A stretch of 64,000 nucleotides of DNA from IMGVR_UViG_3300033182_000980:248001-312000; one strand, 5' to 3'. Counted from the stretch's first letter, positions 20,029-47,570 are shown. A program made the numbers and translations. Notes: a model not told the origin generated them from the sequence alone.

Positions 20029-21255
20029 ATGTTTTTTGAGTATGAAAAAAAGAAGTACAACGGAATAGACGATTACACTTGGGTGAGTGGAGGTAAATTA
20101 TTCACACCTGCCCATGAGCTGTCCGAGATCAAATCAAAGTTTACAAGATATGAGATCATACTCAAAATCTGTCAGGTGATATATGACCACCAAATACCAT
20201 TCCCCTATAAAGAGCACAGCGTATCTAAAGCTAAAGGTGAGTTATCTAAGCTCTTTAATACACATTTCCCTGCTGATGAAAGAGAATGGTATTCAGACTT
20301 ATGCGAAGGCATCAAGTGCTTTAAATATAGGGGGGGCTATCTGCGGATAAAGACCAACCACACAGGCACTTATGTCTCTGACCTATTTTGTCATCGTACT
20401 CGATTAAAGGCACAAAAGAAAAGGTACGCTGATGATCGTCTAGGAATGGTAGGTCTTTGGGAGTATCTTTTATCTTACAGGTGCGAGGAGGAGTCTGATA
20501 TAAATACGGTCATGTATATGTTTATCAATGGTATCTTTCACTTTAGCGATAAGATTGACCATACAGCGGTTTACACTTCGGGGAGATTATCTATTGGTAC
20601 TGTAAGTCAATTTAAACCCGCTAGTGCTAAGGCTCTGTACGATTTATTTGGAGCTAAGAATGTACTCGACTTTTGTGCTGGATGGGGGGATAGGCTAGTA
20701 GGATTTCATGCATCCAATGCCGAAACATATATCGGAATTGACCCTAACTCTGATTTGCACCCTCAATATGAAAAGATACATGAGTTTTGTGGCACTGGAA
20801 AAGAAGCAAAGTTCATCTGTTTGCCCGCAGAAGATGTAGATTATTCAGAACTCCGATATGACTTTGTTTTCACATCTCCACCATACTTTGATCTGGAAAT
20901 ATACAATGGAGAAGAGACTCAATCCGTGAAAAGATACCCTAAGATCGACCATTGGTTAAAGGGGTTCTTGTTCAAATCTTTGAGTAAGATTTATGAGTAT
21001 CTAGAAGATGGTGGTAGAATAGCGGTCAATATATCAGACAGTCCAGCAGTGAACATTTTTGTTTGTGAGTCTATGCTAGAGCACATGGAGTCGATAGGTG
21101 CTACTTATGAGGGTACTATAGGTTATGGCCTTGCTCGTAGACCTACCGAGAGTGGGCATAATTATTTAAAAGAAAAGTCTGAGCCTATTTTTATTTGGTC
21201 TAAGGGTGTTGCTCCCGATCCAAATCGACAAACAGATAATTTTTTTGGAGTCTAG
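20029..21255 (+). CDS. DNA amino-methyltransferase (N4-C/N6-A type), paralogue 1
   Basis: LDFCAGWGDR (motif I), YIGIDPN, FTSPPYF (motif IV); start at MFFEYE. Confidence 0.85.
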   Translation: MFFEYEKKKYNGIDDYTWVSGGKLFTPAHELSEIKSKFTRYEIILKICQVIYDHQIPFPYKEHSVSKAKGELSKLFNTHFPADEREWYSDLCEGIKCFKYRGGYLRIKTNHTGTYVSDLFCHRTRLKAQKKRYADDRLGMVGLWEYLLSYRCEEESDINTVMYMFINGIFHFSDKIDHTAVYTSGRLSIGTVSQFKPASAKALYDLFGAKNVLDFCAGWGDRLVGFHASNAETYIGIDPNSDLHPQYEKIHEFCGTGKEAKFICLPAEDVDYSELRYDFVFTSPPYFDLEIYNGEETQSVKRYPKIDHWLKGFLFKSLSKIYEYLEDGGRIAVNISDSPAVNIFVCESMLEHMESIGATYEGTIGYGLARRPTESGHNYLKEKSEPIFIWSKGVAPDPNRQTDNFFGV

Positions 21256-21256
21256 T

Positions 21257-21856
21257 ATGAAGCCCAATAAAGATTTCTTTATCGAGTGCAATGAAGGTGG
21301 GATGATGAGTCCACCAGAGTTTGAACGCACTTTTTGTAATCAATGTAAGAACCGACAATGTGTTCGAGCTAACTGGGCTTTTAGTGCTTGGGATAAGCGA
21401 ATCCTTACCCAAGTGGACCGCTTATTAACAAACCCTAACATTGTGCTTCAATCAGAGGCGAGTCGGTGGGAAGGGGTGTCCGACTTTGAGGGCTTTCAAG
21501 AGCCACAGGTGATCGAGGTTTGGGGTGTACCAGAGGAGCAACCACAAGCTCCTCTGATTATAGGTGATGAGAGGGAAGAAGCAGACACAGTACCAGCACC
21601 TCCTGTCGATCCTCCAGAGATTGAAGAAGAAGATGCTGTGATGACTTCTGCCCCTAAGATTGAGTTAGAACCTCAACCGATACCTCAACCCCAACAGGTG
21701 TATCAGAATCCTTTGAACACACCCCCACAAGAAATCACGATAGGTGAAGCTCCTAAGCCTGCTCAACCACAGTCTCGCCCTAAGAGGTTTCAAGCAGACC
21801 CTTGGGCTGTGTCCGAAACGCTACCTGTAGGTGGCAAGTTTAAGATGGGGAAATAA
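21257..21856 (+). CDS. Hypothetical protein with Cys cluster and Pro/Glu-rich tail
   Basis: C-x14-CNQC-x4-C pattern; ATG 1 nt after the MTase stop. Confidence 0.6.
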   Translation: MKPNKDFFIECNEGGMMSPPEFERTFCNQCKNRQCVRANWAFSAWDKRILTQVDRLLTNPNIVLQSEASRWEGVSDFEGFQEPQVIEVWGVPEEQPQAPLIIGDEREEADTVPAPPVDPPEIEEEDAVMTSAPKIELEPQPIPQPQQVYQNPLNTPPQEITIGEAPKPAQPQSRPKRFQADPWAVSETLPVGGKFKMGK

Positions 21857-21858
21857 GA

Positions 21859-22412: not shown

Positions 22413-22473
22413 TAAGCGTGTTGGGTGGGCGTTCTACCCATAAACTCAAACCATACACTACAGGAGAATCACT

Positions 22474-22662: not shown

Positions 22663-22728
22663 TCGACCCTCTCGGTCTAACTAGACCAAACACACACACA
22701 CATCACACACACAGAAAGGGCATGACCC

Positions 22729-23043: not shown

Positions 23044-23081
23044 CAGATCATATAACTAAAGCATATTCATTTGTGTCGGAG

Positions 23082-24366: not shown

Positions 24367-24403
24367 TGTTCCATTCCTTTACAAATTATTTAGTAAAGAC
24401 AAC

Positions 24404-28181: not shown

Positions 28182-28186
28182 GTTTG

Positions 28187-34883: not shown

Positions 34884-36059
34884 TTAAAAGAAATAATCAT
34901 CCCTAACCCATTTAGGTTCGGATGTTAAACCCTTACTCCAAATAAAGATCGGCTCACAAGTTGGGAGGTCTGTTTTCTGACCTCCTCGCTCGGACATACG
35001 ATAGCCAATCACACCCTCATAGGTCGCTCCTAAGTTTCTCATGTGTTCAAGCATCGGTGTGCAGATGTCCTCACCTTTTTTATCTGCGATGTTGATTGCT
35101 ATCCTACCACCCTCTTTAAGTACCGACCAGCATTTAGTGAGGGTAGCGAGTAAGAAATCGTTGACCCAATCTTTAAGATCTGGATAACGCTTCCACGATT
35201 GAGTCTCCTCTTGGCTGTACCTCTCGATGTCGAAGTAAGGTGGACTCGTAAATACAAAGTCCACCTTAACATCAGATAGATCAGCATCCTCTGCTGGAGA
35301 GCAAATAAATCGAGTGGTCTTACCTGTATCGCAGAGATTGACGATTTGCTGGTAAGGCTCATGAAGGTTCGTATTAGGATCAATCCCGATATAAGACTCC
35401 GCGTTCGAGGCAAGGAAACCGACAAGCCTATCGCCCCACCCTGCCGAGAAATCTAAGACACTTTTGGCTTGGAACAGATCGTAGAGAGCTTTAGCTGATT
35501 CGGCTTTAAACTGACTTGCCATATATGTGTGCATCTTTAAGGCTCTTCTAAGGGTTTGCTTATTGACTCCACCTCTCTCATAGATGTCTCTCTCACAAAT
35601 GCCAAAGAAGCATCTTAAGAATGAGTTGCTTTTACTGGCATTGACCCACTCATCATAGGGTGAGTTTCCTTGAGTTCGATAGCTACATTTCATCCTCTGT
35701 GATTGGGTAAACAGATTAGAGACAGCCTTACCTTTGTAGTAGCTGTTAAGGTAAACATATTTACCTTGATAGGTTGTGTCTAGGGGTGTAGCTTGGCGAG
35801 GTGCGATCCATTCTTCAAATACGAATGGATCTTCCTTTGCTTTAAGATCATTAAAGTCGTTTATTGCCTGTCCTACTGTGTACTCGGAGTAGGGGTAAGG
35901 CAAAGACTCAATGATGGGTGCGATGTGATCTTTGATCTGTTCCTTAGTGTATGTCTCACGAAGCATACTCCACTCATTAGGGAGTATGTGAATATATCCG
36001 TCTTTGATATACTCAATGTCATCTAGCGACTTGAGTGTGGTTTTATAGTCAAAGTACAT
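34884..36059 (-). CDS. DNA amino-methyltransferase paralogue 2
   Basis: LDFSAGWGDR, FTSPPYF, EPIFIWSKG. Confidence 0.85.
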   Translation of the reverse strand: MYFDYKTTLKSLDDIEYIKDGYIHILPNEWSMLRETYTKEQIKDHIAPIIESLPYPYSEYTVGQAINDFNDLKAKEDPFVFEEWIAPRQATPLDTTYQGKYVYLNSYYKGKAVSNLFTQSQRMKCSYRTQGNSPYDEWVNASKSNSFLRCFFGICERDIYERGGVNKQTLRRALKMHTYMASQFKAESAKALYDLFQAKSVLDFSAGWGDRLVGFLASNAESYIGIDPNTNLHEPYQQIVNLCDTGKTTRFICSPAEDADLSDVKVDFVFTSPPYFDIERYSQEETQSWKRYPDLKDWVNDFLLATLTKCWSVLKEGGRIAINIADKKGEDICTPMLEHMRNLGATYEGVIGYRMSERGGQKTDLPTCEPIFIWSKGLTSEPKWVRDDYFF

Positions 36060-36893
36060 TTAAGCACCTAAATTCCAGAATAGGGTTTTCCCTTTTAACT
36101 TGTATGGATTTTCAGTGATCCACTCCCATGCTTTTTTATCCCAGAGTTTGTTGCAAGGGAATGGGGTTGTGAAGTGATCCATCTCATCGTAGAAATCGTA
36201 CTCGGACTTATAAATCTTGAGGCAAGATGGGACACTTCCTAGATTAGAGATCAGAGCCTTCTCTATAGTCTTAACGCTAGAGGTAGCAACGATTACAATC
36301 TTCTTCCCTTCAAAGTCTGGCTCAAACATAACACCAGCGATGTAGTCAACACCTAAGAACCCTTTAATCAGCCCAACACTTGTAATGCCACTACCCCCTT
36401 CAATGACTAGTGTGTTGTATTCATTCCGAGAGAAGAACTCTTTAGAACGCTCTGTCCAATAGTTGATGTAGACAGGGTGGTTGAACGCATCTGGACACAT
36501 CTGCCAATCGTTTTGAGAAGCTATTTTCTTTGTCTGCGAGGACAAGATAGCTACCATGTTGTGCTTTAAGGGGATCAACTCTCCACCATATAACTCGACC
36601 TTTTTCAGCATCTCTTGAGAGTACGCTTTTGTGTTCGGGTAAGCTATTTTGATGTCATAGCCTAGCTCTTTGCCCCAATAAGCTAACGCCCACCCTGTGT
36701 ACGATCCTCTGACTGTGAGGTGTACAATGGGTTTATCTTTTGTGAAGTAGTCCGAGGCGAGAAGTCTCCTTATGCCTTCAAGTTTCGCCCAAGGGGGGAG
36801 ATCGAGGGAGCCGTTGAGTAGATCATCTCTTTTGACATCGACATTTTTGTGTTTGACTTTGTATGTTTCTACTGGAGTATCAAAGTTTAACAT
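36060..36893 (-). CDS. PLP-dependent fold-type II enzyme (ACC deaminase/D-cysteine desulfhydrase/TrpB-like superfamily)
   Basis: VKRDDLL...WAKLEG (candidate Schiff-base Lys), GSYTGWALA, GGSGITSVG, LFWNLG; start at MLNFDTP. Confidence 0.75.
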   Translation of the reverse strand: MLNFDTPVETYKVKHKNVDVKRDDLLNGSLDLPPWAKLEGIRRLLASDYFTKDKPIVHLTVRGSYTGWALAYWGKELGYDIKIAYPNTKAYSQEMLKKVELYGGELIPLKHNMVAILSSQTKKIASQNDWQMCPDAFNHPVYINYWTERSKEFFSRNEYNTLVIEGGSGITSVGLIKGFLGVDYIAGVMFEPDFEGKKIVIVATSSVKTIEKALISNLGSVPSCLKIYKSEYDFYDEMDHFTTPFPCNKLWDKKAWEWITENPYKLKGKTLFWNLGA

Positions 36894-37791
36894 TGAACAT
36901 CGCCTTTTCTTCAAACTCTATGTCTTTGAGTATTTGGTTGTATATCGCTCTAGTGTCTTTATATGAAGTCCCTGCTAATAAGACTCTTCTGTGTAAGCCC
37001 TTTAAGCCTCCACTTTTCCCTGTGGTGTGGAAGTTGGATCTGTTCGTTTTGTGTTTATCAAAGTATTCTTTATGCGTATGTTCGGTAATGAACCATTTGG
37101 GCTGGATCTTATTACTAGCTGGATTGAGCAGTAGCTGATCCCACAGTAGAGATTTACACAAGGACTCTATTCGGGGTGTGCGAAATGGACACAACACTTC
37201 AATACCCTTACTTTTTAAGAACTGTCTTATCACCCACAGGTTGTGAGGGCTTCCAGAAGGGTACTTTTCTTCTAGCTCTTTCTCGACTAAGTTTTTGAAA
37301 TAGTTATCTAGGGCAACCCTAGACCCTCCTTTTTTGTATGCTCCCCAAAGGCTGTTAACTTTCGCTCCGCTGTGAGCAAACATCGTAGTGTAAAACCCTG
37401 TGATCAGATAGGGTGTGGTCATTTGATTTCTCATGTAAGAATAAGCATGACAAACCTGTGTCTCTATATTCCTCGTTGTGCGTGTGGTCTTAATGACTTC
37501 CTTAACTTCCCTTAACAAGTCATCTCGAATAGGGTCAGAGGGGATGGTAGCCACTTTCAAGGGTAGGTCATAATGCTTTGCTATTTGTTGAGCATACTCA
37601 AGGTCTTTGGAATACTCGCCCTCAATCTCAAAGGTGATCAGCTCTTTTGGCGGCCTTCTTAGCTCTATCATTGTGAACAATAGCATGGAAGAATCTATCC
37701 CACCAGAAAACGAGAGACTAATGTCTTGGGGTAGGTTTCTTACCGAGTCATAGATTGCTTCTTTAAATTCCTGTACCCATGTGTGTGTCAT
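36880..37791 (-). CDS. Asparagine synthetase-like PP-loop ATP pyrophosphatase (synthetase domain only)
   Basis: LSFSGGIDSS PP-loop; DLEYAQQIAKHY, LITG, EVLCPF; no glutaminase domain. Confidence 0.75.
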   Translation of the reverse strand: MTHTWVQEFKEAIYDSVRNLPQDISLSFSGGIDSSMLLFTMIELRRPPKELITFEIEGEYSKDLEYAQQIAKHYDLPLKVATIPSDPIRDDLLREVKEVIKTTRTTRNIETQVCHAYSYMRNQMTTPYLITGFYTTMFAHSGAKVNSLWGAYKKGGSRVALDNYFKNLVEKELEEKYPSGSPHNLWVIRQFLKSKGIEVLCPFRTPRIESLCKSLLWDQLLLNPASNKIQPKWFITEHTHKEYFDKHKTNRSNFHTTGKSGGLKGLHRRVLLAGTSYKDTRAIYNQILKDIEFEEKAMFNVKL

Positions 37792-38470
37792 ATCTTCTCA
37801 TCAACTCTCTTGAGTTTTTTAACTCGTTGTTTTGAGTCCTTACATGACAAGAATGAGCAAACGAGGTTACGAGTCCGAAATCTAAACAGCCACTCTCTTT
37901 ACAGAGGAAATCGCATAGGTCAACGAGAGCCATGTAGTCAGCATATCCAGACTTGGACACAGCTTGGCTTCTAAAGTTAGCTGTTAAGTTAAGTTTCCCA
38001 CCTCTAGGTTTCAAGTCGATTGTCAGTAAGCAAGGCATACCGCCCATAACCTTTTTACCATCCGACTGAGGATCATATACACCAATGACAATCGTTTTAG
38101 CTTGCTTGTTTTCCCTTAGCCTCTTAATCGCCTGCTCGATTTGATTGAAGCCTCCGTTCCAAGAAATCATTCGCCCCCAATAACTATTCGTCCATTTCCC
38201 CTCTTTGTTCTGCTGATACTCTAACATCTGTGGGAACAACATATTAGGTTCTGGCTTCACAAAGGTAACAGACTTAGCATAGTCGATACGCTCATCTCCA
38301 AAGATGTCTCTAAACTCTTTATCAAACACAGGGCAGACCTCGGAGGATTTGATCTCTATACCCATGTTTAAAATCTCATAAAGACCTCCCATATTCATGC
38401 CTTTGTCAAGGATGTCTTGAGTCGCTTTGACCCATGCTTCTGCACAGTTGTTTGCTGTTATGTGATACAT
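37763..38470 (-). CDS. Thymidylate synthase/dCMP hydroxymethylase-fold protein (divergent, cytosine-type Asp)
   Basis: YWGR, NQIEQAIKRL, MPCL (catalytic Cys), FRSQAVSKSGYADY, HSCH. Confidence 0.8.
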   Translation of the reverse strand: MYHITANNCAEAWVKATQDILDKGMNMGGLYEILNMGIEIKSSEVCPVFDKEFRDIFGDERIDYAKSVTFVKPEPNMLFPQMLEYQQNKEGKWTNSYWGRMISWNGGFNQIEQAIKRLRENKQAKTIVIGVYDPQSDGKKVMGGMPCLLTIDLKPRGGKLNLTANFRSQAVSKSGYADYMALVDLCDFLCKESGCLDFGLVTSFAHSCHVRTQNNELKNSRELMRRYDTHMGTGI

Positions 38471-38473: not shown

Positions 38474-39679
38474 CTACACTCCAAAGAAGTTGTCTTGATG
38501 CCATTTAGGTTCGGGAGCTTCACCCTTACTCCAGATAAAGATCGGTTCGCAAAACACATCTATCTTCGACAACTCATCGTTTAAGGAATGGTGATTGCCT
38601 GGCCTCTTAGACATACGATAACCCATGACTCCTTCATAGGTTGCCCCTAGTGAGTCCATGTACTCGATCATGGGCTGACATACTCGTATGTCTCCTCTTA
38701 CTTTATCCGAGATGTTCACGCATATACGACCCCCATCTTCTAAAGCGTCCCAACATTTTTTTAGAGTCGGGTAGAGGAAGCCATTAAGCCAGTCATCTGT
38801 ATCTGGATAACGCTTCCATGATTGCGTGTCCTCTTGGCTGTACTTCTCGGTATCAAAGTAAGGTGGACTAGTGAATACAAAGTCTACTTTAACATCGGAT
38901 AGATCAGCATCCTCTGCCGGCGAACAGATAAACCGAGTGGACTTATTCGTAGAACAATAATCAGCGATCTTCTGATAAGGTTCATGGAGCTTAGTGTTAG
39001 GGTCTAGTCCGACATAAGACTCCGCATCCGAGGCTAAAAACCCAACTAACCTGTCGCCCCACCCCATAGAGAAATCTAAGACTCGTTTAGCTCCGAAGAA
39101 GTTATACATAGCCTTAGCTAAGGTAGGCTTAAACTGAGCTGGAATATATCCAGACATACCGATAGCGTTTACAAGTATCTTGCTATTCACACCCTTTGAC
39201 GGATCGTATAGTGTCCATAGAGGTCTAAGGAACGCTCTCTTTTTGGACTTGAGGTCTGTTCGAGTCCATTGCCTCATTGCACTTGGGAACTGCTTATGAT
39301 CAACCTCTAAACGCATAGGCTCACTATATTGGTTAGACACCTTGAGTCCTTTGTTATTAGGGGCGAAGTAAAGATACCTCCCTTGATAGGTATGGGGCTG
39401 ATCTATCTCGCACCGAGGCAACCCCCACTCTCCCTCAATCGGGGTCATGTAATCGGATTGAACCTCTAGCCAGTCTTTCTTGATCTCTTGAGGAGTGTAC
39501 TTAGTGAATGGGTAAGGTAGCCCTTCAATCTTTGCCGACAGGTAGTCTGTGATCTCATCTCTACTAAAGTTATCTACCATCTCTAACCACTGATGCGGTG
39601 GTATAAAGATTTCTTGTCCGCTCACAACAGCATAATCTTCAAGACTATCTTTTTTGGTTTTTTCATAATCAAAGAACAT
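38474..39679 (-). CDS. DNA amino-methyltransferase paralogue 3
   Basis: LDFSMGWGDR, FTSPPYF; near-duplicate of 40876..42081. Confidence 0.85.
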   Translation of the reverse strand: MFFDYEKTKKDSLEDYAVVSGQEIFIPPHQWLEMVDNFSRDEITDYLSAKIEGLPYPFTKYTPQEIKKDWLEVQSDYMTPIEGEWGLPRCEIDQPHTYQGRYLYFAPNNKGLKVSNQYSEPMRLEVDHKQFPSAMRQWTRTDLKSKKRAFLRPLWTLYDPSKGVNSKILVNAIGMSGYIPAQFKPTLAKAMYNFFGAKRVLDFSMGWGDRLVGFLASDAESYVGLDPNTKLHEPYQKIADYCSTNKSTRFICSPAEDADLSDVKVDFVFTSPPYFDTEKYSQEDTQSWKRYPDTDDWLNGFLYPTLKKCWDALEDGGRICVNISDKVRGDIRVCQPMIEYMDSLGATYEGVMGYRMSKRPGNHHSLNDELSKIDVFCEPIFIWSKGEAPEPKWHQDNFFGV

Positions 39680-39708: not shown

Positions 39709-40872
39709 TTATACTCCAAAGTAGTTATCTTGATGCCACTTAGGTTCTGGAGCTTCCCCTTTACTCCAAATAAAGATCGGTTCGCAGAATACCTCTCCTA
39801 GATTCATTCCGTTTCGCTTTTGCATCTTGTAGCCAATGACACCTTCATAGGTAGCCCCTAATCTCTCCATGTGGTCAATCATTGGCGAACAGATGTCTAA
39901 TCCTTTTTTGTCGGCTATGTTGATTGCTATCCGACCACCTTCTTCTAACGCTTCATAACACTTAGTAAGCGTGGGTAGCAGAAATGATTTAATCCACTGT
40001 TGAGGATTTCTGTATCGTTTCCACGATTGCGTATCTTCATCGCTATATCTTTCTATGTCGAAGTAAGGGGGGCTTGTAAAAACGAAGTCTACTTTAACAT
40101 CGGATAGATCAGCATCCTCTGCTGGAGAACAGATAAATCGAGTCTCCTTGTTCGTATCGCAGAAGCGTACAATCTGTCCATAAGGCTCATGGAGCTGGGT
40201 ATTAGGATCAATGCCGATATAGGACTCGGCATTGGAGGCGAGGAAGCCAACTAACCTATCGCCCCAACCAGCAGAGAAATCTAAAACCCGTTTAGCTCCG
40301 AAGAAGTTATATAAGGCGAGGGCAGTCTCTGGTTTAAACTGACTTGCCATATAGGTGTGCATCTTTAAGGCTCGGTACAGGACGCTGTTATTAAGCCCAC
40401 TTGCCTTGACCTCATCTTTAAGTATTCCAAACAGACACCTCAAAAATGAGCTTGGCTTGTTTGGGTGTTGCCATTCAAACATCGGGGAGTTTCCGTTATG
40501 GTATCCACAACACATCCTCTGCACTTGAGTAAACTGATTGGAGACTTTTTGACCCTTATTACTTGGCGTAAAGTATAAGGCTCTACCCTTATAAGTAAGC
40601 TCTATTGCTTCTGTTTGTCTTGGTGCGTTCCAAGTACCCAAAGTGTATGTAGGGGTAGCACCTTGAACTTGTGACCAGTCGCCTTGCGTTTCAAGTTCAA
40701 GGTATCTTCGTAGAGGGAAGGGCTTATCTTTTATGATCTCGGTTAAGTGTTGTTTTATCTCTTGGTCAGAGTAAAACTTTTTAAGGGCTTCCCAGTCCGA
40801 TGGTTTGCAGGACACAGTATCTGTGAAATACTCTGATATATCTTTCTTTTCGATCTCATAGTCAAAGAACAT
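39709..40872 (-). CDS. DNA amino-methyltransferase paralogue 4
   Basis: LDFSAGWGDR, FTSPPYF; closest to 34884..36059. Confidence 0.85.
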   Translation of the reverse strand: MFFDYEIEKKDISEYFTDTVSCKPSDWEALKKFYSDQEIKQHLTEIIKDKPFPLRRYLELETQGDWSQVQGATPTYTLGTWNAPRQTEAIELTYKGRALYFTPSNKGQKVSNQFTQVQRMCCGYHNGNSPMFEWQHPNKPSSFLRCLFGILKDEVKASGLNNSVLYRALKMHTYMASQFKPETALALYNFFGAKRVLDFSAGWGDRLVGFLASNAESYIGIDPNTQLHEPYGQIVRFCDTNKETRFICSPAEDADLSDVKVDFVFTSPPYFDIERYSDEDTQSWKRYRNPQQWIKSFLLPTLTKCYEALEEGGRIAINIADKKGLDICSPMIDHMERLGATYEGVIGYKMQKRNGMNLGEVFCEPIFIWSKGEAPEPKWHQDNYFGV

Positions 40873-40875: not shown

Positions 40876-42081
40876 TCATACCCCAAAGTAGTTATCTTGA
40901 TGCCATTTAGGTTCGGGTGCTTCCCCCTTACTCCAAATGAAGATAGGCTCACAGAATATATCTACCTTAGCCAGCTCATCGTTTAAGGAATGGTGATTAC
41001 CTGGCCTCTTAGACATACGATAGCCCATCACCCCCTCATAGGTTGCTCCTAGTGAGTCCATGTACTCAATCATAGGTTGGCACACCCTAACATCTCCATG
41101 TACTTTGTCGGAGATGTTTACACAGATACGACCTCCTTCTTCTAAAGCGTCCCAACACTTCTTGAGCGTTGGGTAGAGGAAACCTTTAAGCCAGTCATCT
41201 GTTTCTGGATATCGCTTCCAACTCTGTGTATCTTCTTGACTGTACTTTTCGGTATCAAAGTATGGTGGGCTGGTAAATACAAAATCAACTTTAACATCGG
41301 ATAGGTCAGCATCTTCCGCAGGGGAACAGATGAACCTCGTTTTCTTATTGGTGTTGCAATAAGCCTCTATCTGTCCATAAGGTTCATGGAGCTTGGTATT
41401 AGGGTCAATCCCGACATAAGACTCTGCATCAGAAGCTAAGAATCCGACTAACCGATCACCCCAACCCATAGAGAAATCTAGCACCCTTTTAGCTCCGAAG
41501 AAGTTATACATGGCTTTGGCTAGAGTAGGCTTGAACTGAGCCGGTATGTAATAAGACATATTAATGGCGTTATAGAGCATCTTGCTGTTAACCCCTTTCG
41601 ACCTATCGTATAGGGTGAAGAAGGGTCTTAGGAAGTATCTCTTGTCGCCCTTCATCCCTATGCGAGTCCATTGAGTGATGGCACTTTTATATTGTAGGTG
41701 GTCAACCTCTAAACGCATAGGCTCGGTGAACTGATTAGATACCTTGAGTCCTTTGTTATTAGGAGCGAAATAAAGATACTTACCTTGATAAGTATGAGAC
41801 TCATCTATCTCACAGCGTGGTAATCCCCATTCTCCCTCAATCGGAGTCATGTAATCAGATTGAACCTCTAGCCAGTCACGATGTACCTCTTGGGGAGTGT
41901 ACTTGGTATATGGGAAAGGCAGACCTTCAATCTTAGTAGATAAGTAAGTGATGATCTCATCACGAGTGAACTTATCTAGCATCTGTGACCATTCGTGAGG
42001 GGGTATAAAGATTTCTTGTCCTCTTACGACTTCATATTCTTCTATGTTGTCTTTGGCTTTCTTTTCATATTCAAAAAACAT
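40876..42081 (-). CDS. DNA amino-methyltransferase paralogue 5
   Basis: LDFSMGWGDR, FTSPPYF. Confidence 0.85.
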   Translation of the reverse strand: MFFEYEKKAKDNIEEYEVVRGQEIFIPPHEWSQMLDKFTRDEIITYLSTKIEGLPFPYTKYTPQEVHRDWLEVQSDYMTPIEGEWGLPRCEIDESHTYQGKYLYFAPNNKGLKVSNQFTEPMRLEVDHLQYKSAITQWTRIGMKGDKRYFLRPFFTLYDRSKGVNSKMLYNAINMSYYIPAQFKPTLAKAMYNFFGAKRVLDFSMGWGDRLVGFLASDAESYVGIDPNTKLHEPYGQIEAYCNTNKKTRFICSPAEDADLSDVKVDFVFTSPPYFDTEKYSQEDTQSWKRYPETDDWLKGFLYPTLKKCWDALEEGGRICVNISDKVHGDVRVCQPMIEYMDSLGATYEGVMGYRMSKRPGNHHSLNDELAKVDIFCEPIFIWSKGEAPEPKWHQDNYFGV

Positions 42082-42907
42082 TCATTCTCCTAAAAATAGT
42101 CCTACATTGAGGCAGACTTTCCCTGCGTTCTTTACAGGTATTATACTTATATTGAAGCCCATTTAACCTGTCTCTTTCTCTCCACAGATCACCCCTCTCC
42201 TCTCTACAAGTTTCGTTTTCTGCTACTTGTTGCTCTCTCTCTTTATGTCTGCCTTCTATATTGGCTTGCAGGACTTGTAGCTCTTCTTTCAATCTAGCAA
42301 GTTCCACTCGTATTTCTTCTTCTTCATCGGGATCGACACTAGACTTGTTTGGTGAGTAAACAGGCATCTCTAGCACCCCGAACCTTTCAGTGAAAACATC
42401 TCTCTGTCCGTTGTAGTAGAGGTTGGTGAAAGACACCCCTTGTCGATCACCGTTAAGGTTGTAGAACCTCACCGTCTCGTCTAAATCTACGATCAAGGCT
42501 TTTTCTTCTCTGAGCCTACCAGTCTGTGTGGACTCAACCTGACCCTCAAAGACCACACCTCTATCTTCGGTATAAGCCAGAACAACTGACACATAAGGGA
42601 GTGAATACTGAATACCCCTATCTGCCTCTTGTGTTCTCACAGCAATATGCTGTTGGAGGTCATCTTCTTGAGTTAACCACCCCATGAGTTCTTCATCATA
42701 AATAATATGTGGCACTCTTGAACAGGACATACTGTCAGCCTGTCTCTTCAGAGATGCGATTTGTTCCGAGAAATCCTCGTGTGTGATTGAGCAATCAACG
42801 CTAGTTCGAGCTTTGGTTCTCTCTACGACATCTCTCCAAGACTTTTCACATCTCTCTTTTAAGGTTGCACACCCAGAAAAGAGGAGGGCGAAAATCAGCA
42901 GACGCAT
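42071..42907 (-). CDS. Predicted lipoprotein with coiled coils
   Basis: MRLLIFALLFSG-C lipobox; C-terminal coiled coil and several Cys. Confidence 0.55.
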   Translation of the reverse strand: MRLLIFALLFSGCATLKERCEKSWRDVVERTKARTSVDCSITHEDFSEQIASLKRQADSMSCSRVPHIIYDEELMGWLTQEDDLQQHIAVRTQEADRGIQYSLPYVSVVLAYTEDRGVVFEGQVESTQTGRLREEKALIVDLDETVRFYNLNGDRQGVSFTNLYYNGQRDVFTERFGVLEMPVYSPNKSSVDPDEEEEIRVELARLKEELQVLQANIEGRHKEREQQVAENETCREERGDLWRERDRLNGLQYKYNTCKERRESLPQCRTIFRRMNVF

Positions 42908-44433
42908 TACAGATCCATTAGTGCGTCTAATGGATCATCAAAGACCTCTGTCTTTTTATCCTTGTTCTTGTAGGTGGTGTTCGTTTGGAACTGCAAAGGC
43001 ATATTCATAATGCGACCATAAGGCCAGACGATTTGAGCATCAAACTCCTCAAAGGGAGCTTGGTCACGAGACTTGAGGCATTGATACTTGACCATGCTAT
43101 TCTCACGCTTGTCATCTCCGTACCATGATGAGATAACCACATCTGCCGAACGCTCTGCTTCATTGGCATAGCTCAAGTGCGTGAGGTTGTATGATCCACC
43201 ATTCTTCTCGGCAGACTTGTACCCCTCACGACTGATTTGGAATAGACAGAGGACAGGAATACCCTCACCTCGATTGAAGCCTAGAGCAGTCTTTTTAAGA
43301 TCACGAATGACCTCATTCAATCGGTCTGTAGTCGAGGCAACCCATTTACGAGGAGATACCAAGAGAGCGTGGTCAACAACCATCATCTTGAATGGTGTTT
43401 TCTGATAAAGAAGCTCGGCACGAGTCCGAATGTTCTCTACTGTGAAGTCAAGTACATCTGGATCAGCCACCTCAATATGGATTGACCCATAAGTACCTTG
43501 CTTCATCCCATCGTCAAGGTCTTTGATGACTTCTTTCATAAAGGACATCTCATCCTCGTTCAGCTCACCCTTTTTAATCTTAGAAGGCTCGATACCTGCG
43601 TCTGTTTGCCCTTGTTGGATGCCAAGGGCGATACGCTTCTCTCGGAACTTGGGGTGCATGGAATGGTAGACATAGATGATGCGTCTACATTGAGGATAGT
43701 GCATCTCAAGTGAGAAGTAGAGGGTGCTTGTTCCACCATAGACTGCTTGGTTATACACCCAATTAAGAGATGAGGTTGACTTGAGGTGTCCTGTAAACGC
43801 CGCCATGATGTAAAGCTCTTTACGCTTGAACCCACCGATAGCGTTGTCGATGATCTGTAGACCAGTTTGTGGTCTGATGTCTGTGGTCGCATTTTTAGTG
43901 CGTTCGTATTCCTCCCAAAAGTCTGAACCATCACCTAAGATTTCTCCACCGATACGAGAACCGAATGTCGGGGTGTTGATCTTAGCGATCTCATTTAAGA
44001 GGAAGTTGCCAGCATCTCTTGAGCCTTTGAGGATCTTCTTTTCCCTACCCTCTTTGACCTCTAGTCCTGCACGAGCGATGACTTTAGCATCTGCCATGAC
44101 AGACGCTAGTCGAGTCATGCGTCCTTCTTCTACTCGCCTCTCAATGAGCGAGATGAAGTCTCCTCGATATGACACAGGTCGGTTAGCGATCTGTTGGATA
44201 CGGTCAGCTTCATCAAAAGACTGATTCTCTTCAAAGTGTTCTCGGACAGATTGTTGTGAGGGTAAGTGTCCGTGTTTGAGGGTGAAGTCCTCAACATACT
44301 CAAAGACATTGATCTCGGCGGGTAAGTCAAAGCGTAGTACCGACTCTTTAAGAGCACAGTAGTTTTGGAACATGAGCTTGGGGTCATCCCCTCTAGGTTC
44401 ATCAGGGAGTATGCTTCGTAATATATCACTCAT
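42907..44433 (-). CDS. dnaB: DnaB-like replicative helicase
   Basis: AAFTGHLKST (variant Walker A), YFSLEM, VVDH, LFQISR, ERSADVV, KSRD. Confidence 0.85.
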   Translation of the reverse strand: MSDILRSILPDEPRGDDPKLMFQNYCALKESVLRFDLPAEINVFEYVEDFTLKHGHLPSQQSVREHFEENQSFDEADRIQQIANRPVSYRGDFISLIERRVEEGRMTRLASVMADAKVIARAGLEVKEGREKKILKGSRDAGNFLLNEIAKINTPTFGSRIGGEILGDGSDFWEEYERTKNATTDIRPQTGLQIIDNAIGGFKRKELYIMAAFTGHLKSTSSLNWVYNQAVYGGTSTLYFSLEMHYPQCRRIIYVYHSMHPKFREKRIALGIQQGQTDAGIEPSKIKKGELNEDEMSFMKEVIKDLDDGMKQGTYGSIHIEVADPDVLDFTVENIRTRAELLYQKTPFKMMVVDHALLVSPRKWVASTTDRLNEVIRDLKKTALGFNRGEGIPVLCLFQISREGYKSAEKNGGSYNLTHLSYANEAERSADVVISSWYGDDKRENSMVKYQCLKSRDQAPFEEFDAQIVWPYGRIMNMPLQFQTNTTYKNKDKKTEVFDDPLDALMDL

Positions 44434-45137
44434 AGTTTAACTCGCTTGTGCGATCCCATATTAGATACGCTTTTCTTATTTGTTGATCGAGAGGAGGAAC
44501 GACTCGAAGAAGTCTTTTCATTAAGATTTATACGATCCCAAGGAAGAATGGTGTCCTCTAAAAGACGACTCCACGCAATATGTCCTTCTTCAAGAGGCTT
44601 GTCTGGATCAATAATCAACCAAGTGGGCTTCTTGAGGTGTTCTCGGATCTCGATAGTCTCGGTTACAACCTCGGACATAGCCGCGTTTCGTGCGACTTTT
44701 GTACCAAGCCGAATGACCATCAGATAAGGTGCTTCAGCGAGATCGTCCAAAGAGTAGACCTTTAAGTCTCGCTGAAAGTCTGGATCAGCGATGTCTTTGC
44801 CTTGAATCATCATAGACCCAAGCCAAGCTGACATCAGCGTGTGATCTCCGATGACCTTAACGAACAGGTTTGGGTTTCTCATATTCCCAAGAGCTGATCT
44901 TAGGTGTAGCCTTAGTTGGTCTGTGGTCGCTGTGATGACAAGGTTCTTAGAAATCTTACCATTAAGCATAGAACGCTTTCGTATCGGGGCAACGCTCAGA
45001 TAGTTCCATGCCCTTTCTGCTTGCTCGTCAATCGCTTTATCAATAACGCAATCGCATTGGATGGCTTGAGGCATACCCATGTGTCCGTCATCGGTTTGGG
45101 TGTAGCCTAATCCACCACATTTTTTACATTCACTCAT
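44430..45137 (-). CDS. DnaC/DnaI-like helicase loader, degenerate ATPase
   Basis: N-terminal CKKCGGLGY...QCDC; AAA+-like strand pattern without GKT; directly upstream of DnaB. Confidence 0.5.
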   Translation of the reverse strand: MSECKKCGGLGYTQTDDGHMGMPQAIQCDCVIDKAIDEQAERAWNYLSVAPIRKRSMLNGKISKNLVITATTDQLRLHLRSALGNMRNPNLFVKVIGDHTLMSAWLGSMMIQGKDIADPDFQRDLKVYSLDDLAEAPYLMVIRLGTKVARNAAMSEVVTETIEIREHLKKPTWLIIDPDKPLEEGHIAWSRLLEDTILPWDRINLNEKTSSSRSSSRSTNKKSVSNMGSHKRVKL

Positions 45138-45187
45138 AGTCTTGCTGACCTCCTTTGGTTATTCATTATATGAATAAGGAGGCAACT

Positions 45188-46354
45188 TTATACGCCAAAA
45201 AAATTATCTTGTTGCCACTTGGGTTCGGGGGGGTTAGACCCCTTACTCCAAACAAAAATAGGTTCCGCTACATTCTCCTTTACACCCTGTCGTGGAGATA
45301 GCGGATAGCCAATCGAACCTTCATAGGTTAAACCTAAAGACCTAGCGTGTTCTAAAAGAGGAGTGCTGACCACCACTTTCTTCCCTTTCCACATGAAGTC
45401 GCTGATGTTAATCGCTATCCTCCCATTCTCTTTTAGAGACTCCACTATGAGTGAGACGGTCTTGAGTAAAAACTCATTTAGCCACAGGTCAAAGTCTTGA
45501 TAGCGGGAAGAAGACTGGGTGTCCTCATCGGAGTAAATCTCTAGGTTGAAGTATGGTGGGGATGTGAAAACGAAGTCATACTCAAGCGATGAGAAGTCCA
45601 CATCTTCCGAGGGGGAGCAGAGAAGCCTAACCTCTTTATCGGGAGCATACGCATTATGTATCTGACGATAAGGTTCATGTAGCTTAGTGTTAGGGTCTAT
45701 CCCTATGTAAGATTCAGCATCCGAGGCTAAGAAGCCGACAAGCCGATCACCCCAACCAGCCGAGAAATCTAAGACGCTCTTAGCTCCGAAAAAGTCATAC
45801 AGGTGCTTTGCACAGTTGGGCTTAAACTGTGTGAGCGTTCGTATGGTTCTTTCATTTGAGAAGGCGTGTATGATTGAGCTTCTGCTCAACTTAGGCTTCA
45901 TAAAGAGTCCTGTTAGTCTTGAGAAGTCATTTTCTTTTCTTTTACCTTGTTCCCAGTAATCTATGGGAGATAGGCCATTTGAGTATCTCCCCTCATGTCT
46001 TGCCTTGATCATGTACTTGCTAGACAACCGATTATAAATAGAAGTGTTTGGTGAAAGTTGTAAGTAAGACCCTTTGTAGAGAGGGTCGGTGTCGGAGTAA
46101 AGGCTTACCCAAGGTCCTTTGATGATCTGTGGTTTGTCATTCTTCAAACTGCGGAAGAGGCTGTTTAGGTCGCAGTTGATCTCTGCAAATGGGAAAGGTG
46201 AGTCAAGCTCTATAACCTTGTCTCGTATGAAGACTAAGACATCTTTCCTATCGTAGTTGTCTTTAATGTACTCCCAATCTTCTTTAGGGCAGTATGGGAA
46301 TCCATCTTTTGACCCTATCAATCCCCCAAGGGTTTTATCGACCTCAAAGAACAT
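45188..46354 (-). CDS. DNA amino-methyltransferase paralogue 6
   Basis: LDFSAGWGDR, FTSPPYF; start at MFFEVD (46354), 1 nt after the upstream stop. Confidence 0.85.
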   Translation of the reverse strand: MFFEVDKTLGGLIGSKDGFPYCPKEDWEYIKDNYDRKDVLVFIRDKVIELDSPFPFAEINCDLNSLFRSLKNDKPQIIKGPWVSLYSDTDPLYKGSYLQLSPNTSIYNRLSSKYMIKARHEGRYSNGLSPIDYWEQGKRKENDFSRLTGLFMKPKLSRSSIIHAFSNERTIRTLTQFKPNCAKHLYDFFGAKSVLDFSAGWGDRLVGFLASDAESYIGIDPNTKLHEPYRQIHNAYAPDKEVRLLCSPSEDVDFSSLEYDFVFTSPPYFNLEIYSDEDTQSSSRYQDFDLWLNEFLLKTVSLIVESLKENGRIAINISDFMWKGKKVVVSTPLLEHARSLGLTYEGSIGYPLSPRQGVKENVAEPIFVWSKGSNPPEPKWQQDNFFGV

Positions 46355-46355
46355 A

Positions 46356-47570
46356 CTAAACCCCGAAAAAGTTGTCTTGGTTATACTTAGGTTCGGGTGC
46401 TTCCCCTTTAGACCAAATGAAAATAGGTTCAGAAGATGTGTTCTTCTCGCCATTGGGTAAGGGTCTATTTGAAAGACCATACCCTATCACCCCCTCATAA
46501 GTCGCACCTAGCGATTCCATATGTTTGAGTAAATCTTTACAGATGAACACCTTAAAATTAGGGTTGTCTGATATGTTGATCGCAATCCGACCTCCTACTT
46601 TAAGGCTTTGATATACCTTAGTAAGCGTCTTAAAAAGAAACCCATCTAACCACAGATCAAGATTGGGGTATCTGATGATTGATTGAGTCTCTTCTTTTGT
46701 GTAGGACTCTATGTTAAAGTAAGGGGGTGAGGTTAAAACAAAGTCATAATCTAGCTCGGTATAATCGACATCTTCTGCGGGGCTACAGATAAAGTTTGCT
46801 TCTTTTCCGGTGCCACAAAACTCATGTATCTGTTGATAAGGTTCATGTAGCTTTGTATTAGGGTCAATCCCGATATACGAGTCGGCATTAGACGCATGAA
46901 ATCCAACCAAACGATCACCCCATCCAGCACAAAAATCTAAGATCCTCTTAGCCCCGAAGAAGTCATAAATGCCTTTAGCTGTAGAGGGTTTAAATTGAGA
47001 TACCGAACCACAGCCTAGCCGACCCGCAGTATATACTGCATCTTTGTTTAGTTTGTCGTTGAGGAATACAAACGCACTTAAAAAGTTCAGAGTAGGTGAA
47101 TCGTACTGTGAGGGATGAAACTCATCTTGTTTCATGTGATTCCATACACCAACTATACCCTCATACTTACCCGCCCTCCGTTGGTTTTGAGCTTTTAATC
47201 TTTCCTCGTGTGTGAACTGATCAGAGATTTTTGTTCCAGCAACGGCCGAAAAGACCCATTGGTTACCTTTATATGTGAAGTCTTTAATCTCACACTTTTG
47301 AGTGCTCCACTCCCTCTCAACAGGGGAGTAGTAGCTAGACTTTAACTGATTGAACAGAGCTTTGCACTCGATACGAGAAAAGGTCTTCAAAGGAAAGTCT
47401 ATTTGGTGCTCATGGATTAGCTTGTAGATATGAACATATATCTGTTTTCGTGCAAACTTTGCTTTGATCTCATCAAAGTCTTCCTTACAAACTTCAAAGA
47501 ATCCATCTTTTATCCACACATAATCATCTAGGGAGGTTCTTACCTGTTTTTTTTCATAGTCAAAGAACAT
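46356..47570 (-). CDS. DNA amino-methyltransferase paralogue 7
   Basis: LDFCAGWGDR, LTSPPYF; closest to 20029..21255. Confidence 0.85.
   Translation of the reverse strand: MFFDYEKKQVRTSLDDYVWIKDGFFEVCKEDFDEIKAKFARKQIYVHIYKLIHEHQIDFPLKTFSRIECKALFNQLKSSYYSPVEREWSTQKCEIKDFTYKGNQWVFSAVAGTKISDQFTHEERLKAQNQRRAGKYEGIVGVWNHMKQDEFHPSQYDSPTLNFLSAFVFLNDKLNKDAVYTAGRLGCGSVSQFKPSTAKGIYDFFGAKRILDFCAGWGDRLVGFHASNADSYIGIDPNTKLHEPYQQIHEFCGTGKEANFICSPAEDVDYTELDYDFVLTSPPYFNIESYTKEETQSIIRYPNLDLWLDGFLFKTLTKVYQSLKVGGRIAINISDNPNFKVFICKDLLKHMESLGATYEGVIGYGLSNRPLPNGEKNTSSEPIFIWSKGEAPEPKYNQDNFFGV

What the first reader, a model, noticed from the sequence alone, without database searches (positions are those of the whole stretch)
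20029..47570. Seven paralogous SPPY methyltransferases with a variable N-terminal half
Seen: seven genes of about 390-410 aa sharing a QFK(P/A)-LDFxxGWGDR-YxGxDPN-TSPPYF-EPIFxWSKG core behind a divergent ~190-aa N-terminal region. They fall into four types: 20029/46356, 34884/39709, 38474/40876 and 45188. No cognate restriction enzyme is evident, and all lie in replication-gene operons. Established: SPPY is typical of N4-cytosine (some N6-adenine) MTases. Inference: an anti-restriction array diversified in target recognition, with the putative TRD placed first; alternatively some copies serve the neighbouring base-modification pathway.
Basis: partly seen in the sequence, partly recalled or inferred. 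Interest (0 to 1): 0.7.

Follow-up and report, generated by a model that had tools for sequence, protein, structure and literature searches.

The report
Seven-gene methyltransferase array in jumbo phage
A 376-kb marine jumbo phage carries seven old, intact copies of a virus-only methyltransferase that most likely marks its DNA at seven different short sequences, in a genome that has also purged nearly all common restriction sites.

Summary
Seven intact paralogues of 387-408 aa share a conserved C-terminal SAM-methyltransferase half (57-93% identity) and a much more divergent N-terminal half (19-75%). One start needs correcting: 45188-46354, not 46480.

The catalytic half is a circularly permuted relative of the PF01555 N4-cytosine/N6-adenine DNA methylases, with an invariant TSPPYF. 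The N-terminal ~180 aa matches no solved or AFDB structure. It occurs almost only fused to this methyltransferase.

The two-domain family is virus-only: more than 3,200 metagenomic hits, in jumbo phages and in giant eukaryotic viruses. It splits into at least 15 subfamilies, and each phage carries 2 to 11 or more copies. The window's copies are ancient (dS saturated) and under purifying selection.

Two findings reshape the picture. First, the array is interleaved with a conserved thymidylate-synthase-like/PP-loop/PLP cassette, even in distant jumbo phages. Second, the genome shows extreme restriction-site avoidance: ACGT and GCGC 0 times in 376 kb, and median observed/expected (O/E) of 0.09 for 6-bp palindromes.

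Best reading (confidence about 0.55): sequence-specific DNA amino-methyltransferases, probably m4C, with an N-terminal recognition domain, acting against restriction. Substrate, target base and specificity are not shown. A role in base hypermodification is not excluded.

The parts
20029..21255 (+). Paralogue A (408 aa), type 1. N-domain residues 1-193, methyltransferase half from QFK at 194, SPPY at 283.
   Evidence: Starts 8 nt after the PolA stop. Orthologue in L001 at 76% identity.
34884..36059 (-). Paralogue B (391 aa), type 2. QFKA at 183, SPPY at 272. Directly downstream of the PLP-enzyme gene.
38474..39679 (-). Paralogue C (401 aa), type 3. N-domain at 39137-39679, methyltransferase half at 38474-39136. 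This is the copy that was modelled.
   Evidence: (pLDDT 92, pTM 0.90).
39709..40872 (-). Paralogue D (387 aa), type 2.
40876..42081 (-). Paralogue E (401 aa), type 3. 85% identical to C overall, but dS is about 1.5-1.8.
45188..46354 (-). Paralogue F (388 aa with the corrected start), type 4.
   Evidence: The MFFEVDK start lies one base after the stop of G.
46356..47570 (-). Paralogue G (404 aa), type 1.
17279..20020 (+). Family A DNA polymerase with 3'-5' exonuclease, immediately upstream of paralogue A.
36060..36914 (-). Fold-type II PLP enzyme (284 aa). 29% identical over its full length to the PLP enzyme of the thymidine-hypermodification cluster of Pseudomonas phages M6 and YuA.
   Evidence: (phrog_7093). 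Conserved next to family members in other phages.
36880..37791 (-). PP-loop ATPase of the asparagine-synthase type (303 aa), without a glutaminase domain.
   Evidence: The homologue in G003 has GATase plus Asn_synthase domains.
37763..38470 (-). Thymidylate-synthase-like enzyme (235 aa), a candidate pyrimidine hydroxymethylase or methylase.
   Evidence: 44% identical to the copy in G003.
42071..42907 (-). Unannotated 278-aa ORF between paralogue E and DnaB.
   Evidence: No hit in Pfam, PHROGs or NCBIfam.
42907..44433 (-). DnaB-like replicative helicase.
   Evidence: 91% identical to the copy in L001.
44430..45137 (-). Unannotated 235-aa ORF, conserved in L001 at 83% identity.
47571..49172 (-). 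SNF2-family helicase, directly upstream of paralogue G in the same transcription direction.

Best explanation
The seven genes encode a virus-specific family of SAM-dependent amino-methyltransferases. The C-terminal ~210 aa is a class I methyltransferase domain. Its motif IV-VIII region is homologous to the PF01555 N4-cytosine/N6-adenine DNA methylases, but its motif order is permuted: X-I-II-III then IV-VIII. The N-terminal ~180 aa is a family-specific domain of unrecognised fold. It occupies the position that the target-recognition domain holds in the circular motif order of beta- and gamma-class enzymes, between motif VIII and motif X.

The most likely mechanism is as follows. Each paralogue binds phage DNA through its own N-domain plus two variable catalytic-domain loops. 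It flips a base in a different short sequence and methylates an exocyclic amine, probably N4 of cytosine given the invariant TSPPYF. The genes are co-transcribed with PolA, DnaB and SNF2, so they would act on newly replicated DNA. Methylation would cover sites that the phage has not eliminated from its genome, complementing its very strong restriction-site avoidance.

Shown: paralogy, motifs, fold, family range, age and selection, gene linkage, and site avoidance.
Inferred: DNA as substrate, N4-cytosine as target, N-domain as the recognition domain, and an anti-restriction role.
For: - PF01555 is the only amino-methyltransferase Pfam family matched. All 7 copies exceed the cut-off, and 80 of 82 relatives match.
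- A profile of the family matches the beta-class methylase TTHA0409 (2zie) across motif IV and the following helix.
- Motif I, the acidic residues of motifs II and III, and TSPPYF are invariant in 82 sequences.
- The full-length model is confident (pLDDT 92, pTM 0.90) and has a class I methyltransferase fold.
- The N-domain occurs in 337 50%-identity clusters, almost always at the N-terminus of 360-460-aa proteins with this methyltransferase.
- dN/dS is 0.11 in the N-domain and 0.03 in the catalytic domain. dS is saturated, so the copies are old and individually maintained.
- 10 of 14 subfamily-specific columns lie in N-domain residues 18-153. The rest lie in loops at 277 and 355-364.
- Each copy has orthologues in other phages, and repertoires differ between phages, from 2 to 11 or more copies.
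- Genes are packed into replication operons.
- Restriction pressure is evident: ACGT 0 observed against 652 expected, GCGC 0 against 445, median O/E of 6-bp palindromes 0.09, with different profiles in relatives.
- Marine myovirus-like genomes carry several m4C motifs in varying combinations and 0-6 methyltransferase genes (PMC8919816). This is circumstantial; the link to this family was not shown.
Against: - No biochemical or methylome data exist for any member.
- Pfam scores are only 26.8-33.5 bits against a cut-off of 26.7.
- The best structural matches of the catalytic half are RNA m2G methyltransferases (Trm11, TrmN, Trm14; Z 15-16). No DNA methylase is among the top 50. Beta-class DNA enzymes are permuted, which penalises sequential aligners.
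- The proteins are acidic overall (pI 5.3-6.0). Only the N-domain is neutral to basic.
- The N-domain has no similarity to any known DNA-binding fold.
- The array is tightly linked to a putative base-hypermodification cassette.
- 6-bp sites containing non-avoided 4-mers, such as AAGCTT and GAGCTC around AGCT, are still purged. Methylation therefore does not make avoidance unnecessary.
Confidence: 0.55

Rival explanations
1. Some or all copies belong to a pyrimidine hypermodification pathway. The TS-like enzyme makes a 5-substituted pyrimidine. The PLP enzyme and the asparagine-synthase-like PP-loop enzyme build an amino-acid-derived side chain that ends in an amine or carboxamide. The (S)PPY methyltransferases then N-methylate that group on DNA, possibly in different sequence contexts.
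For: - The cassette MTase-TS-PP-loop-PLP-MTase is conserved in G000, G001 and G004. The variant MTase-390aa-TS-(GATase-AsnS)-PLP occurs in the distant PolB-type jumbo phage G003, where the methyltransferase is only 33% identical.
- The PLP gene lies within 3.5 kb of a family member in 9 of 10 records that have it.
- The PLP enzyme is 29% identical to that of the M6/YuA thymidine-hypermodification cluster.
- From my own knowledge: (D/N/S)PPY enzymes also methylate amide nitrogens, as PrmC/HemK does.
Against: - One cassette per genome faces 2-11 methyltransferases.
- The copies flanking the cassette belong to different subfamilies in different phages, so no orthologue is dedicated to it.
- No 5-hmU DNA kinase, aGPT-Pplase or radical-SAM homologue is found in G000 by tblastn.
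- The closely related contig L001 has 11 copies in 21 kb with no BLAST-detectable homologue of this trio in that stretch.
Confidence: 0.2
2. They are RNA methyltransferases of the Trm11/TrmN/TrmN6 kind (m2G or m6A). Different N-domains would direct them to different tRNAs, rRNA sites or phage transcripts.
For: - The top structural matches of the catalytic half are Trm11, TrmN, Trm14, METTL5 and TrmN6.
- The motif order is the same as in those enzymes.
- A few relatives weakly match Tgs1 (PF09445, 3 of 82) or RsmD (PF03602, 1 of 82).
- The phage has 9 tRNA genes.
Against: - None of the 82 matches PF01170 (the Trm11/RlmL family) at E<=0.01, while 80 match PF01555.
- There is no THUMP or other RNA-binding fold in the N-domain.
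- The genes sit in DNA replication and modification operons, 75-120 kb away from the tRNA cluster.
- Z scores for Trm11 (16.2) are barely above those for unrelated small-molecule O-methyltransferases (15.6).
Confidence: 0.08
3. They are DNA methyltransferases, but the purpose is not defence against host restriction. Candidate purposes are self-marking, so that phage-encoded nucleases can destroy unmethylated host or competitor DNA, or regulation of packaging and transcription.
For: - Several conserved unannotated ORFs lie in the array: 42071-42907, 44430-45137 and 21206-21856.
- A genome wholly lacking ACGT and GCGC could also tolerate its own nucleases of those specificities.
- The copies are old and stably kept.
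Against: - No nuclease domain is recognised next to any copy.
- The avoidance profile spans dozens of known Type II sites and differs between relatives. That is the pattern expected from host restriction.
Confidence: 0.1
4. They methylate proteins or small molecules, for example host defence or translation factors. The variable N-domains would act as protein-recognition modules.
For: - The family is virus-only and multi-copy, with a variable N-terminal module of unknown fold.
- The proteins are acidic.
- From my own knowledge: NPPY-type enzymes include the protein glutamine methyltransferase PrmC.
Against: - Profile similarity is to DNA methylases.
- All copies are embedded in DNA-metabolism operons.
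Confidence: 0.05

Closest known systems
Beta-class N4-cytosine/N6-adenine DNA methyltransferases (Pfam PF01555; M.PvuII, M.RsrI, M.MboIIA, TTHA0409)
   Same: - The (D/N/S)PPY motif IV is followed by the characteristic segment and the 'L..GG.i.i' strand.
- Motif I is glycine-rich.
- Pfam and PDB profile matches.
- TSPPY, as in N4-cytosine enzymes.
- They are orphan, as many phage copies are.
   Different: - The motif order is permuted: the AdoMet-binding half comes before the catalytic half.
- The recognition-domain candidate is N-terminal rather than inserted between the halves, and its fold is unrecognised.
- Scores are only marginally above the family cut-off.
Rare permutation classes of the Malone-Bujnicki scheme with a terminal recognition domain (delta/epsilon; M.MwoI from memory)
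   Same: The linear order is recognition domain, then AdoMet-binding region, then catalytic region. That is one of the arrangements the permutation model predicts. The preprint 10.1101/2023.12.13.571470 describes delta and epsilon as having remained hypothetical.
   Different: I could not read the original paper, so the class letter is not assigned. No sequence comparison with M.MwoI was possible.
Multispecific phage methyltransferases (Bacillus phages SPbeta, phi3T, rho11s; from my own knowledge)
   Same: A phage covers several restriction specificities with related methyltransferase modules.
   Different: - Those are single C5-cytosine enzymes carrying several recognition domains in one polypeptide.
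- Here there are 7 separate amino-methyltransferase genes, each with one N-terminal domain.
THUMP-type tRNA m2G methyltransferases Trm11/TrmN/Trm14
   Same: They are the best structural match of the catalytic half (Z about 16). They share the motif order and an N-terminal substrate-binding domain followed by the catalytic domain.
   Different: - The N-domain is not a THUMP domain.
- There is no PF01170 match.
- Motif IV is SPPY rather than DPPY.
- The genomic context is DNA replication.
Thymidine hypermodification clusters of Pseudomonas phages M6/YuA and Salmonella phage ViI (for the neighbouring cassette)
   Same: A homologous PLP enzyme (29% identity, full length) sits together with a thymidylate-synthase-family enzyme.
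   Different: - No 5-hmU DNA kinase, aGPT-Pplase, radical-SAM or Nmad5 homologue is present.
- A PP-loop/asparagine-synthase-like enzyme is present instead.
- The cassette is embedded in a methyltransferase array.

Membership tests
N6/N4 DNA amino-methyltransferases (PF01555-like) | Match to the family profile above the curated cut-off | tested here: met
   All 7 copies score 26.8-33.5 bits against a cut-off of 26.7, and 80 of 82 relatives match at E<=0.01. The match is marginal and covers only profile positions 1-110.
N6/N4 DNA amino-methyltransferases (PF01555-like) | Catalytic motif IV (D/N/S)PP(Y/F) and a glycine-rich AdoMet motif I | tested here: met
   TSPPYF and LDFxxGWGDR are invariant in the 7 copies and in 82 relatives.
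N6/N4 DNA amino-methyltransferases (PF01555-like) | Beta-class linear order: motifs IV-VIII, then recognition domain, then X-I-III | tested here: not met
   The order here is N-domain, X (QFKP helix), I, II, III, IV-VIII. It is a permuted variant.
N6/N4 DNA amino-methyltransferases (PF01555-like) | Class I Rossmann-like methyltransferase fold | tested here: met
   The model has pLDDT 92, and residues ~180-385 align to many class I methyltransferases at Z 14-16.
N6/N4 DNA amino-methyltransferases (PF01555-like) | Methylation of DNA at a defined sequence | not testable with these tools
   The protein-DNA complex job was not folded. No methylome data are available.
N4-cytosine-specific subgroup | Serine in motif IV ([LIVMF]-T-S-P-P-[FY], the PROSITE N4 signature, recalled from memory) | tested here: met
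   (F/L)TSPPY is present in all 7 copies. Tgs1-type N2-guanine enzymes also use SPPW, so the motif is suggestive, not proof.
Type II restriction-modification system | Cognate restriction endonuclease gene next to the methyltransferase | tested here: not met
   No nuclease domain is found in the adjacent ORFs by Pfam, PHROGs or NCBIfam. Four adjacent ORFs are unannotated, so this is absence of evidence. The GIY-YIG gene at 27855-28292 is not adjacent to any copy.
THUMP-type tRNA m2G methyltransferases (Trm11/TrmN) | N-terminal THUMP domain and a PF01170 catalytic domain | tested here: not met
   The N-domain has no PDB or AFDB match (best Z 3.1). None of the 82 relatives hits PF01170 at E<=0.01. 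Only the generic catalytic fold is shared.
M6/ViI-type thymidine hypermodification pathway (neighbouring cassette) | 5-hmU DNA kinase, aGPT-Pplase, and PLP and/or radical-SAM enzymes, together with a dUMP hydroxymethylase | tested here: inconclusive
   The PLP enzyme (29% identity) and a TS-like enzyme are present. Kinase, aGPT-Pplase1/2, radical-SAM and Nmad5 are not found by tblastn in the genome. BLAST may miss distant homologues.

The most novel reading that the evidence does not exclude
The arrays are a combinatorial DNA-marking toolkit shared by jumbo phages and giant eukaryotic viruses. It would be built on a new class of amino-methyltransferase whose N-terminal domain is a previously unseen DNA-recognition fold.

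In the most novel version, the enzymes act together with the conserved TS-like/PLP/asparagine-synthase-like cassette. They would N-methylate, in a sequence-specific way, the amine or carboxamide of a new hypermodified pyrimidine. That would yield a DNA modification not yet described.
Probability: 0.15. Interest if true: 0.85.

Novelty: new variant of a known kind. Interest (0 to 1): 0.62.

Why it matters
If each paralogue has its own target, this family offers dozens of new DNA methylation specificities. The recognition module would be separable and N-terminal, with an unknown fold. That is useful for understanding how specificity evolves and for enzyme engineering.

It would also show how jumbo phages in restriction-rich hosts combine two strategies: near-complete loss of restriction sites and a variable set of methyltransferases. 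It could further explain the multiple m4C motifs seen in marine viral metaepigenomes.

The conserved link to a TS-like/PP-loop/PLP cassette points to an undescribed DNA base modification pathway. The presence of the same two-domain protein in pithovirus-like viruses, Satyrvirus and a fish poxvirus raises the question of gene flow between phages and giant viruses.

Tried and rejected
- Megablast of 14 kb against 50,697 phage records found no match. tblastn found only partial, catalytic-half matches in cultured phages.
- The ORFs of similar size at 23122-24366 and 29273-30499 were tested as possible extra paralogues and are unrelated. Including them spoiled the first PDB profile search.
- N-domain fold searches in PDB (Foldseek and VIA-align wide) and in AFDB clusters found nothing above noise.
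- The protein-DNA-SAM complex prediction was accepted but not folded, so it gives no evidence.
- Two look-ups of encoding contigs failed because the match boundaries were not gene boundaries.
- The Bujnicki 2002 permutation paper is not held, so the class letter is left open.
- Literature searches for a description of this family or of such arrays found nothing specific.
- I tried to guess specificities by comparing site-avoidance profiles with methyltransferase repertoires in G000, G001, G003, G004 and G005. The profiles differ, but with so few genomes no motif can be assigned.
- The idea that one particular orthologue is dedicated to the TS/PP-loop/PLP cassette was rejected. The flanking copies belong to different subfamilies in different phages.
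- The idea of recent diversifying selection was rejected: dS is saturated and dN/dS is well below 1 in both halves.
- LAGLIDADG fusions in some relatives look like homing-endonuclease insertions and are not functional clues.

Full report
**Where the window lies.** The window is bases 248,001-312,000 of a 375,691-bp IMG/VR virus record that CheckV rates as complete. GC content is 45%. Nine tRNA genes lie elsewhere in the genome. Near-identical words occur in wetland, lagoon, seawater and marine metagenomes. No cultured phage is close: megablast finds nothing, and the nearest PolA is in an uncultured 485-kb phage, LR745208.1.

**The observation.** Seven ORFs at the stated positions align end to end, and 91 columns are invariant among them. 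A six-frame search of the whole genome finds exactly these seven copies, all intact. The part before QFK (172-193 aa) is 19-40% identical between types and 75% within the closest pair. The part after QFK is 57-75% identical between types and 93% within that pair. The four types are confirmed. The 45188 gene should start at 46354 (MFFEVDK), not 46480.

Six copies lie in one tightly packed minus-strand run: [268 aa]-SNF2-G-F-[235 aa]-DnaB-[278 aa]-E-D-C-TS-like-PP-loop-PLP-B. Gaps between genes are 0-50 nt or the genes overlap. Copy A starts 8 nt after PolA.

**The catalytic half.**
- PF01555 (N6_N4_Mtase) is the only amino-methyltransferase family that Pfam matches. The margin is narrow, 26.8-33.5 bits against a cut-off of 26.7, and only the motif IV-VIII part of the profile aligns. 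Of 82 family members, 80 match it. Three match Tgs1 (PF09445), one matches RsmD (PF03602), and none matches the Trm11 family PF01170.
- A family profile aligns with the beta-class methylase TTHA0409 (2zie) from motif IV through the following helix and strand.
- Motif I precedes motif IV here, whereas beta-class enzymes have the reverse order. The family is therefore a circular permutant.
- The AlphaFold model of copy C, built from an 82-sequence alignment, is confident (pLDDT 92, pTM 0.90). Residues ~180-385 form a class I methyltransferase fold.
- The best structural matches are the tRNA m2G enzymes Trm11, TrmN and Trm14 (Z 15-16). Unrelated O-methyltransferases score almost the same (Z 15.6), so fold ranking does not decide the substrate.

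**The N-terminal half.**
- Modelled alone it is still confident (pLDDT 87).
- It has no match in the PDB by Foldseek (best E = 2.3), in AFDB clusters, or in an exhaustive VIA-align scan of 48,161 chains (best Z 3.1).
- It matches only viral clusters in the ESM Atlas (TM 0.64-0.68).
- A profile of this domain searched against 1.8 billion representatives finds 337 clusters. In almost all of them the domain sits at the N-terminus of a 360-460-aa protein with this methyltransferase. Exceptions carry an extra LAGLIDADG endonuclease in front.
- It is therefore a dedicated partner of this catalytic domain.
- In circular motif order it lies between motif VIII and motif X. That is where the target-recognition domain lies in beta- and gamma-class enzymes (my inference from textbook motif orders).
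- A recent classification preprint notes that arrangements with a terminal recognition domain of this kind (delta, epsilon) remained hypothetical.

**The family at large.**
- A profile search returned more than 3,200 full-length relatives among the 8,000 candidates scored. Nearly all are unnamed and come from marine and other metagenomes.
- The nearest ESM Atlas clusters are 100% viral.
- In the viral structure library, full-length look-alikes (TM 0.66-0.76) occur in Pithovirus-like LCPAC viruses (several per virus), Satyrvirus and salmon gill poxvirus.
- In IMG/VR the family lies on fragments of large genomes and on complete 276-290-kb genomes.
- Copy number varies. There are 7 here and 11 in 21 kb of the closely related contig MDTC01012631.1 (DnaB 91% identical). 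G001 has 3, the G004 fragment at least 4, the G005 fragment at least 3, and G003 about 2.

**Age and selection.**
- Every window copy groups with orthologues from other contigs rather than with its neighbours. At least 15 well-supported subfamilies exist, many of them absent from this genome.
- Synonymous sites are saturated even for the closest pair (dS 1.5-1.8). For that pair dN/dS is 0.11 in the N-domain and 0.03 in the catalytic half.
- The copies are therefore old, each kept by purifying selection. This is not a recently diversifying array.
- Columns conserved within subfamilies but different between them are concentrated in the N-domain: 10 of 14, at residues 18-153. The other four lie in two catalytic-domain loops, at 277 just after motif IV and at 355-364.

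**Context I: a conserved modification cassette.** Between copies B and C lie three genes:
- a fold-type II PLP enzyme;
- a PP-loop ATPase of the asparagine-synthase type;
- a thymidylate-synthase-like enzyme.

The same order, MTase-TS-PP-loop-PLP-MTase, is found in G001 and G004. The distant jumbo phage G003 has GC 31%, PolB and a T4-like replication module, and its methyltransferase is only 33% identical. It still has MTase-[390 aa]-TS-(GATase-AsnS)-PLP. The PLP gene is present in all four complete genomes. It lies within 3.5 kb of a family member in 9 of the 10 records that have it.

The PLP enzyme's nearest cultured relatives, at 29% identity over the full length, are the PLP enzymes of the thymidine-hypermodification clusters of Pseudomonas phages M6 and YuA. 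The other components of that pathway are not detectable here. The methyltransferase copies flanking the cassette belong to different subfamilies in different phages. The linkage is therefore between the cassette and the array, not with one orthologue.

**Context II: restriction pressure.**
- The genome has no ACGT (652 expected) and no GCGC (445 expected).
- CGCG occurs 32 times against 361 expected, CCGG 56 against 365, AATT 207 against 936, and GGCC 211 against 562.
- The median O/E of 6-bp palindromes is 0.09, against 1.00 for non-palindromes. Of 45 testable palindromes, 23 are below 0.1.
- The most depleted non-palindromes fit degenerate or type IIS restriction sites: RCATGY, CYCGRG, GRGCYC, GGYRCC, GRCGYC, GGTCTC and GAAGAC. 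GCWGC, CGWCG and GGWCC are also depleted.
- Relatives show equally strong but different profiles.
- GATC, TTAA, GTAC, AGCT, TATA and ATAT are not avoided here.

This is the signature of hosts rich in Type II systems. It makes an anti-restriction role for orphan methyltransferases plausible. It also shows that methylation does not replace avoidance.

**Other methyltransferases in the genome.** A conventional DPPY beta-class PF01555 locus lies outside the window, at genome positions about 20.3-24.6 kb. It has three repeated modules and an HNH-like ORF. No C5 (PF00145) or Dam-type (PF02086) enzyme is found.

**Weighing the readings.**
- Sequence-specific DNA amino-methyltransferases, probably m4C, with an N-terminal recognition domain: supported by the PF01555 homology, the invariant TSPPY, the behaviour of the N-domain, the replication-operon setting, the variable repertoires and the restriction pressure.
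- Against that reading, or neutral: marginal profile scores, RNA enzymes as best structural neighbours, acidic proteins (pI 5.3-6.0, with the N-domain at 5.9-8.9), an N-domain unlike any known DNA binder, and the conserved link with a putative hypermodification cassette.
- Circumstantial support: a marine metaepigenomic study found myovirus-like viral genomes with several m4C motifs (RGCY, CCWGG, GGWCC) in varying combinations and 0-6 methyltransferase genes (PMC8919816). I could not connect those genomes to this family.
- My estimates: about 0.55 for the main reading, 0.2 for a role in hypermodification, and the rest for RNA, protein or non-defensive roles.

**Novelty.** The kind of system, orphan phage DNA methyltransferases, is known. 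New here are the permuted architecture with an N-terminal domain of unrecognised fold, the size and virus-only range of the family, the arrays of 2 to 11 or more old paralogues, and the conserved embedding of a TS-like/PP-loop/PLP cassette. I found no paper describing any of this.

Noticed in passing
Whole genome G000, window 1-64000 included: Extreme restriction-site avoidance. ACGT and GCGC are absent from 375,691 bp (652 and 445 expected). CGCG, CCGG, AATT and GGCC are at O/E 0.09-0.38. The median O/E of 6-bp palindromes is 0.09, against 1.00 for non-palindromes. The depleted non-palindromes match degenerate and type IIS sites (RCATGY, CYCGRG, GRGCYC, GGYRCC, GRCGYC, GGTCTC, GAAGAC). Relatives G001, G003, G004 and G005 have different but also strong profiles.
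   Followed up: partly
window 36060-38470 (-): A cassette of PLP enzyme, asparagine-synthase-type PP-loop ATPase and thymidylate-synthase-like enzyme is conserved inside the methyltransferase array of distant jumbo phages. The PLP enzyme is related to that of the M6/YuA thymidine-hypermodification cluster, but the kinase, aGPT-Pplase and radical-SAM partners are missing. This may be an undescribed base-modification pathway.
   Followed up: partly
Genome G000:C1 about 20,300-24,600 (outside the window): A second methyltransferase locus. It holds a conventional DPPY PF01555 ORF (589-aa open frame), an HNH-like ORF in another frame, and three repeated modules that each begin ...MIITLLRKP.EGSV..NTLK.GCGAINID and end ...GGASRFFKQF. 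It looks like a split or multi-module beta-class methylase.
   Followed up: partly
L001 (MDTC01012631.1) 12439-13362: In the closely related 86.6-kb contig, a PF00291 PLP-enzyme gene also sits inside the methyltransferase array. It is not BLAST-similar to the window's PLP enzyme. That 21-kb stretch also holds a 693-aa Asp/Arg-hydroxylase-domain protein.
   Followed up: no
Viral structure library hits: The full two-domain architecture recurs in giant eukaryotic viruses. These include Pithovirus-like LCPAC viruses (several copies per virus), Satyrvirus (fused into a 699-aa protein named glutathione synthase) and salmon gill poxvirus (422 aa, uncharacterised).
   Followed up: no
P0141, P0150 (relatives found): Some relatives carry a LAGLIDADG_2 homing-endonuclease domain in front of the N-domain. 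This suggests mobile endonuclease insertions in or next to these genes.
   Followed up: no
window 27855-28292 (-): GIY-YIG/T5orf172 endonuclease-domain ORF (145 aa), probably a homing endonuclease. It is not adjacent to any methyltransferase copy.
   Followed up: no
window 19658-19777 (PolA residues 794-833) and 31592-31720 (residues 181-223 of ORF 31052-31753): Both proteins have a weak HypA-like zinc-ribbon match near the C-terminus. The second ORF is conserved in L001 at 72% identity.
   Followed up: no
Genome G000:C1 173,376-180,001 (outside the window): A cluster of nine tRNA genes: Arg x2, Gly, Asn, Tyr, Glu, Lys, Leu and Met. There are none in the window.
   Followed up: no
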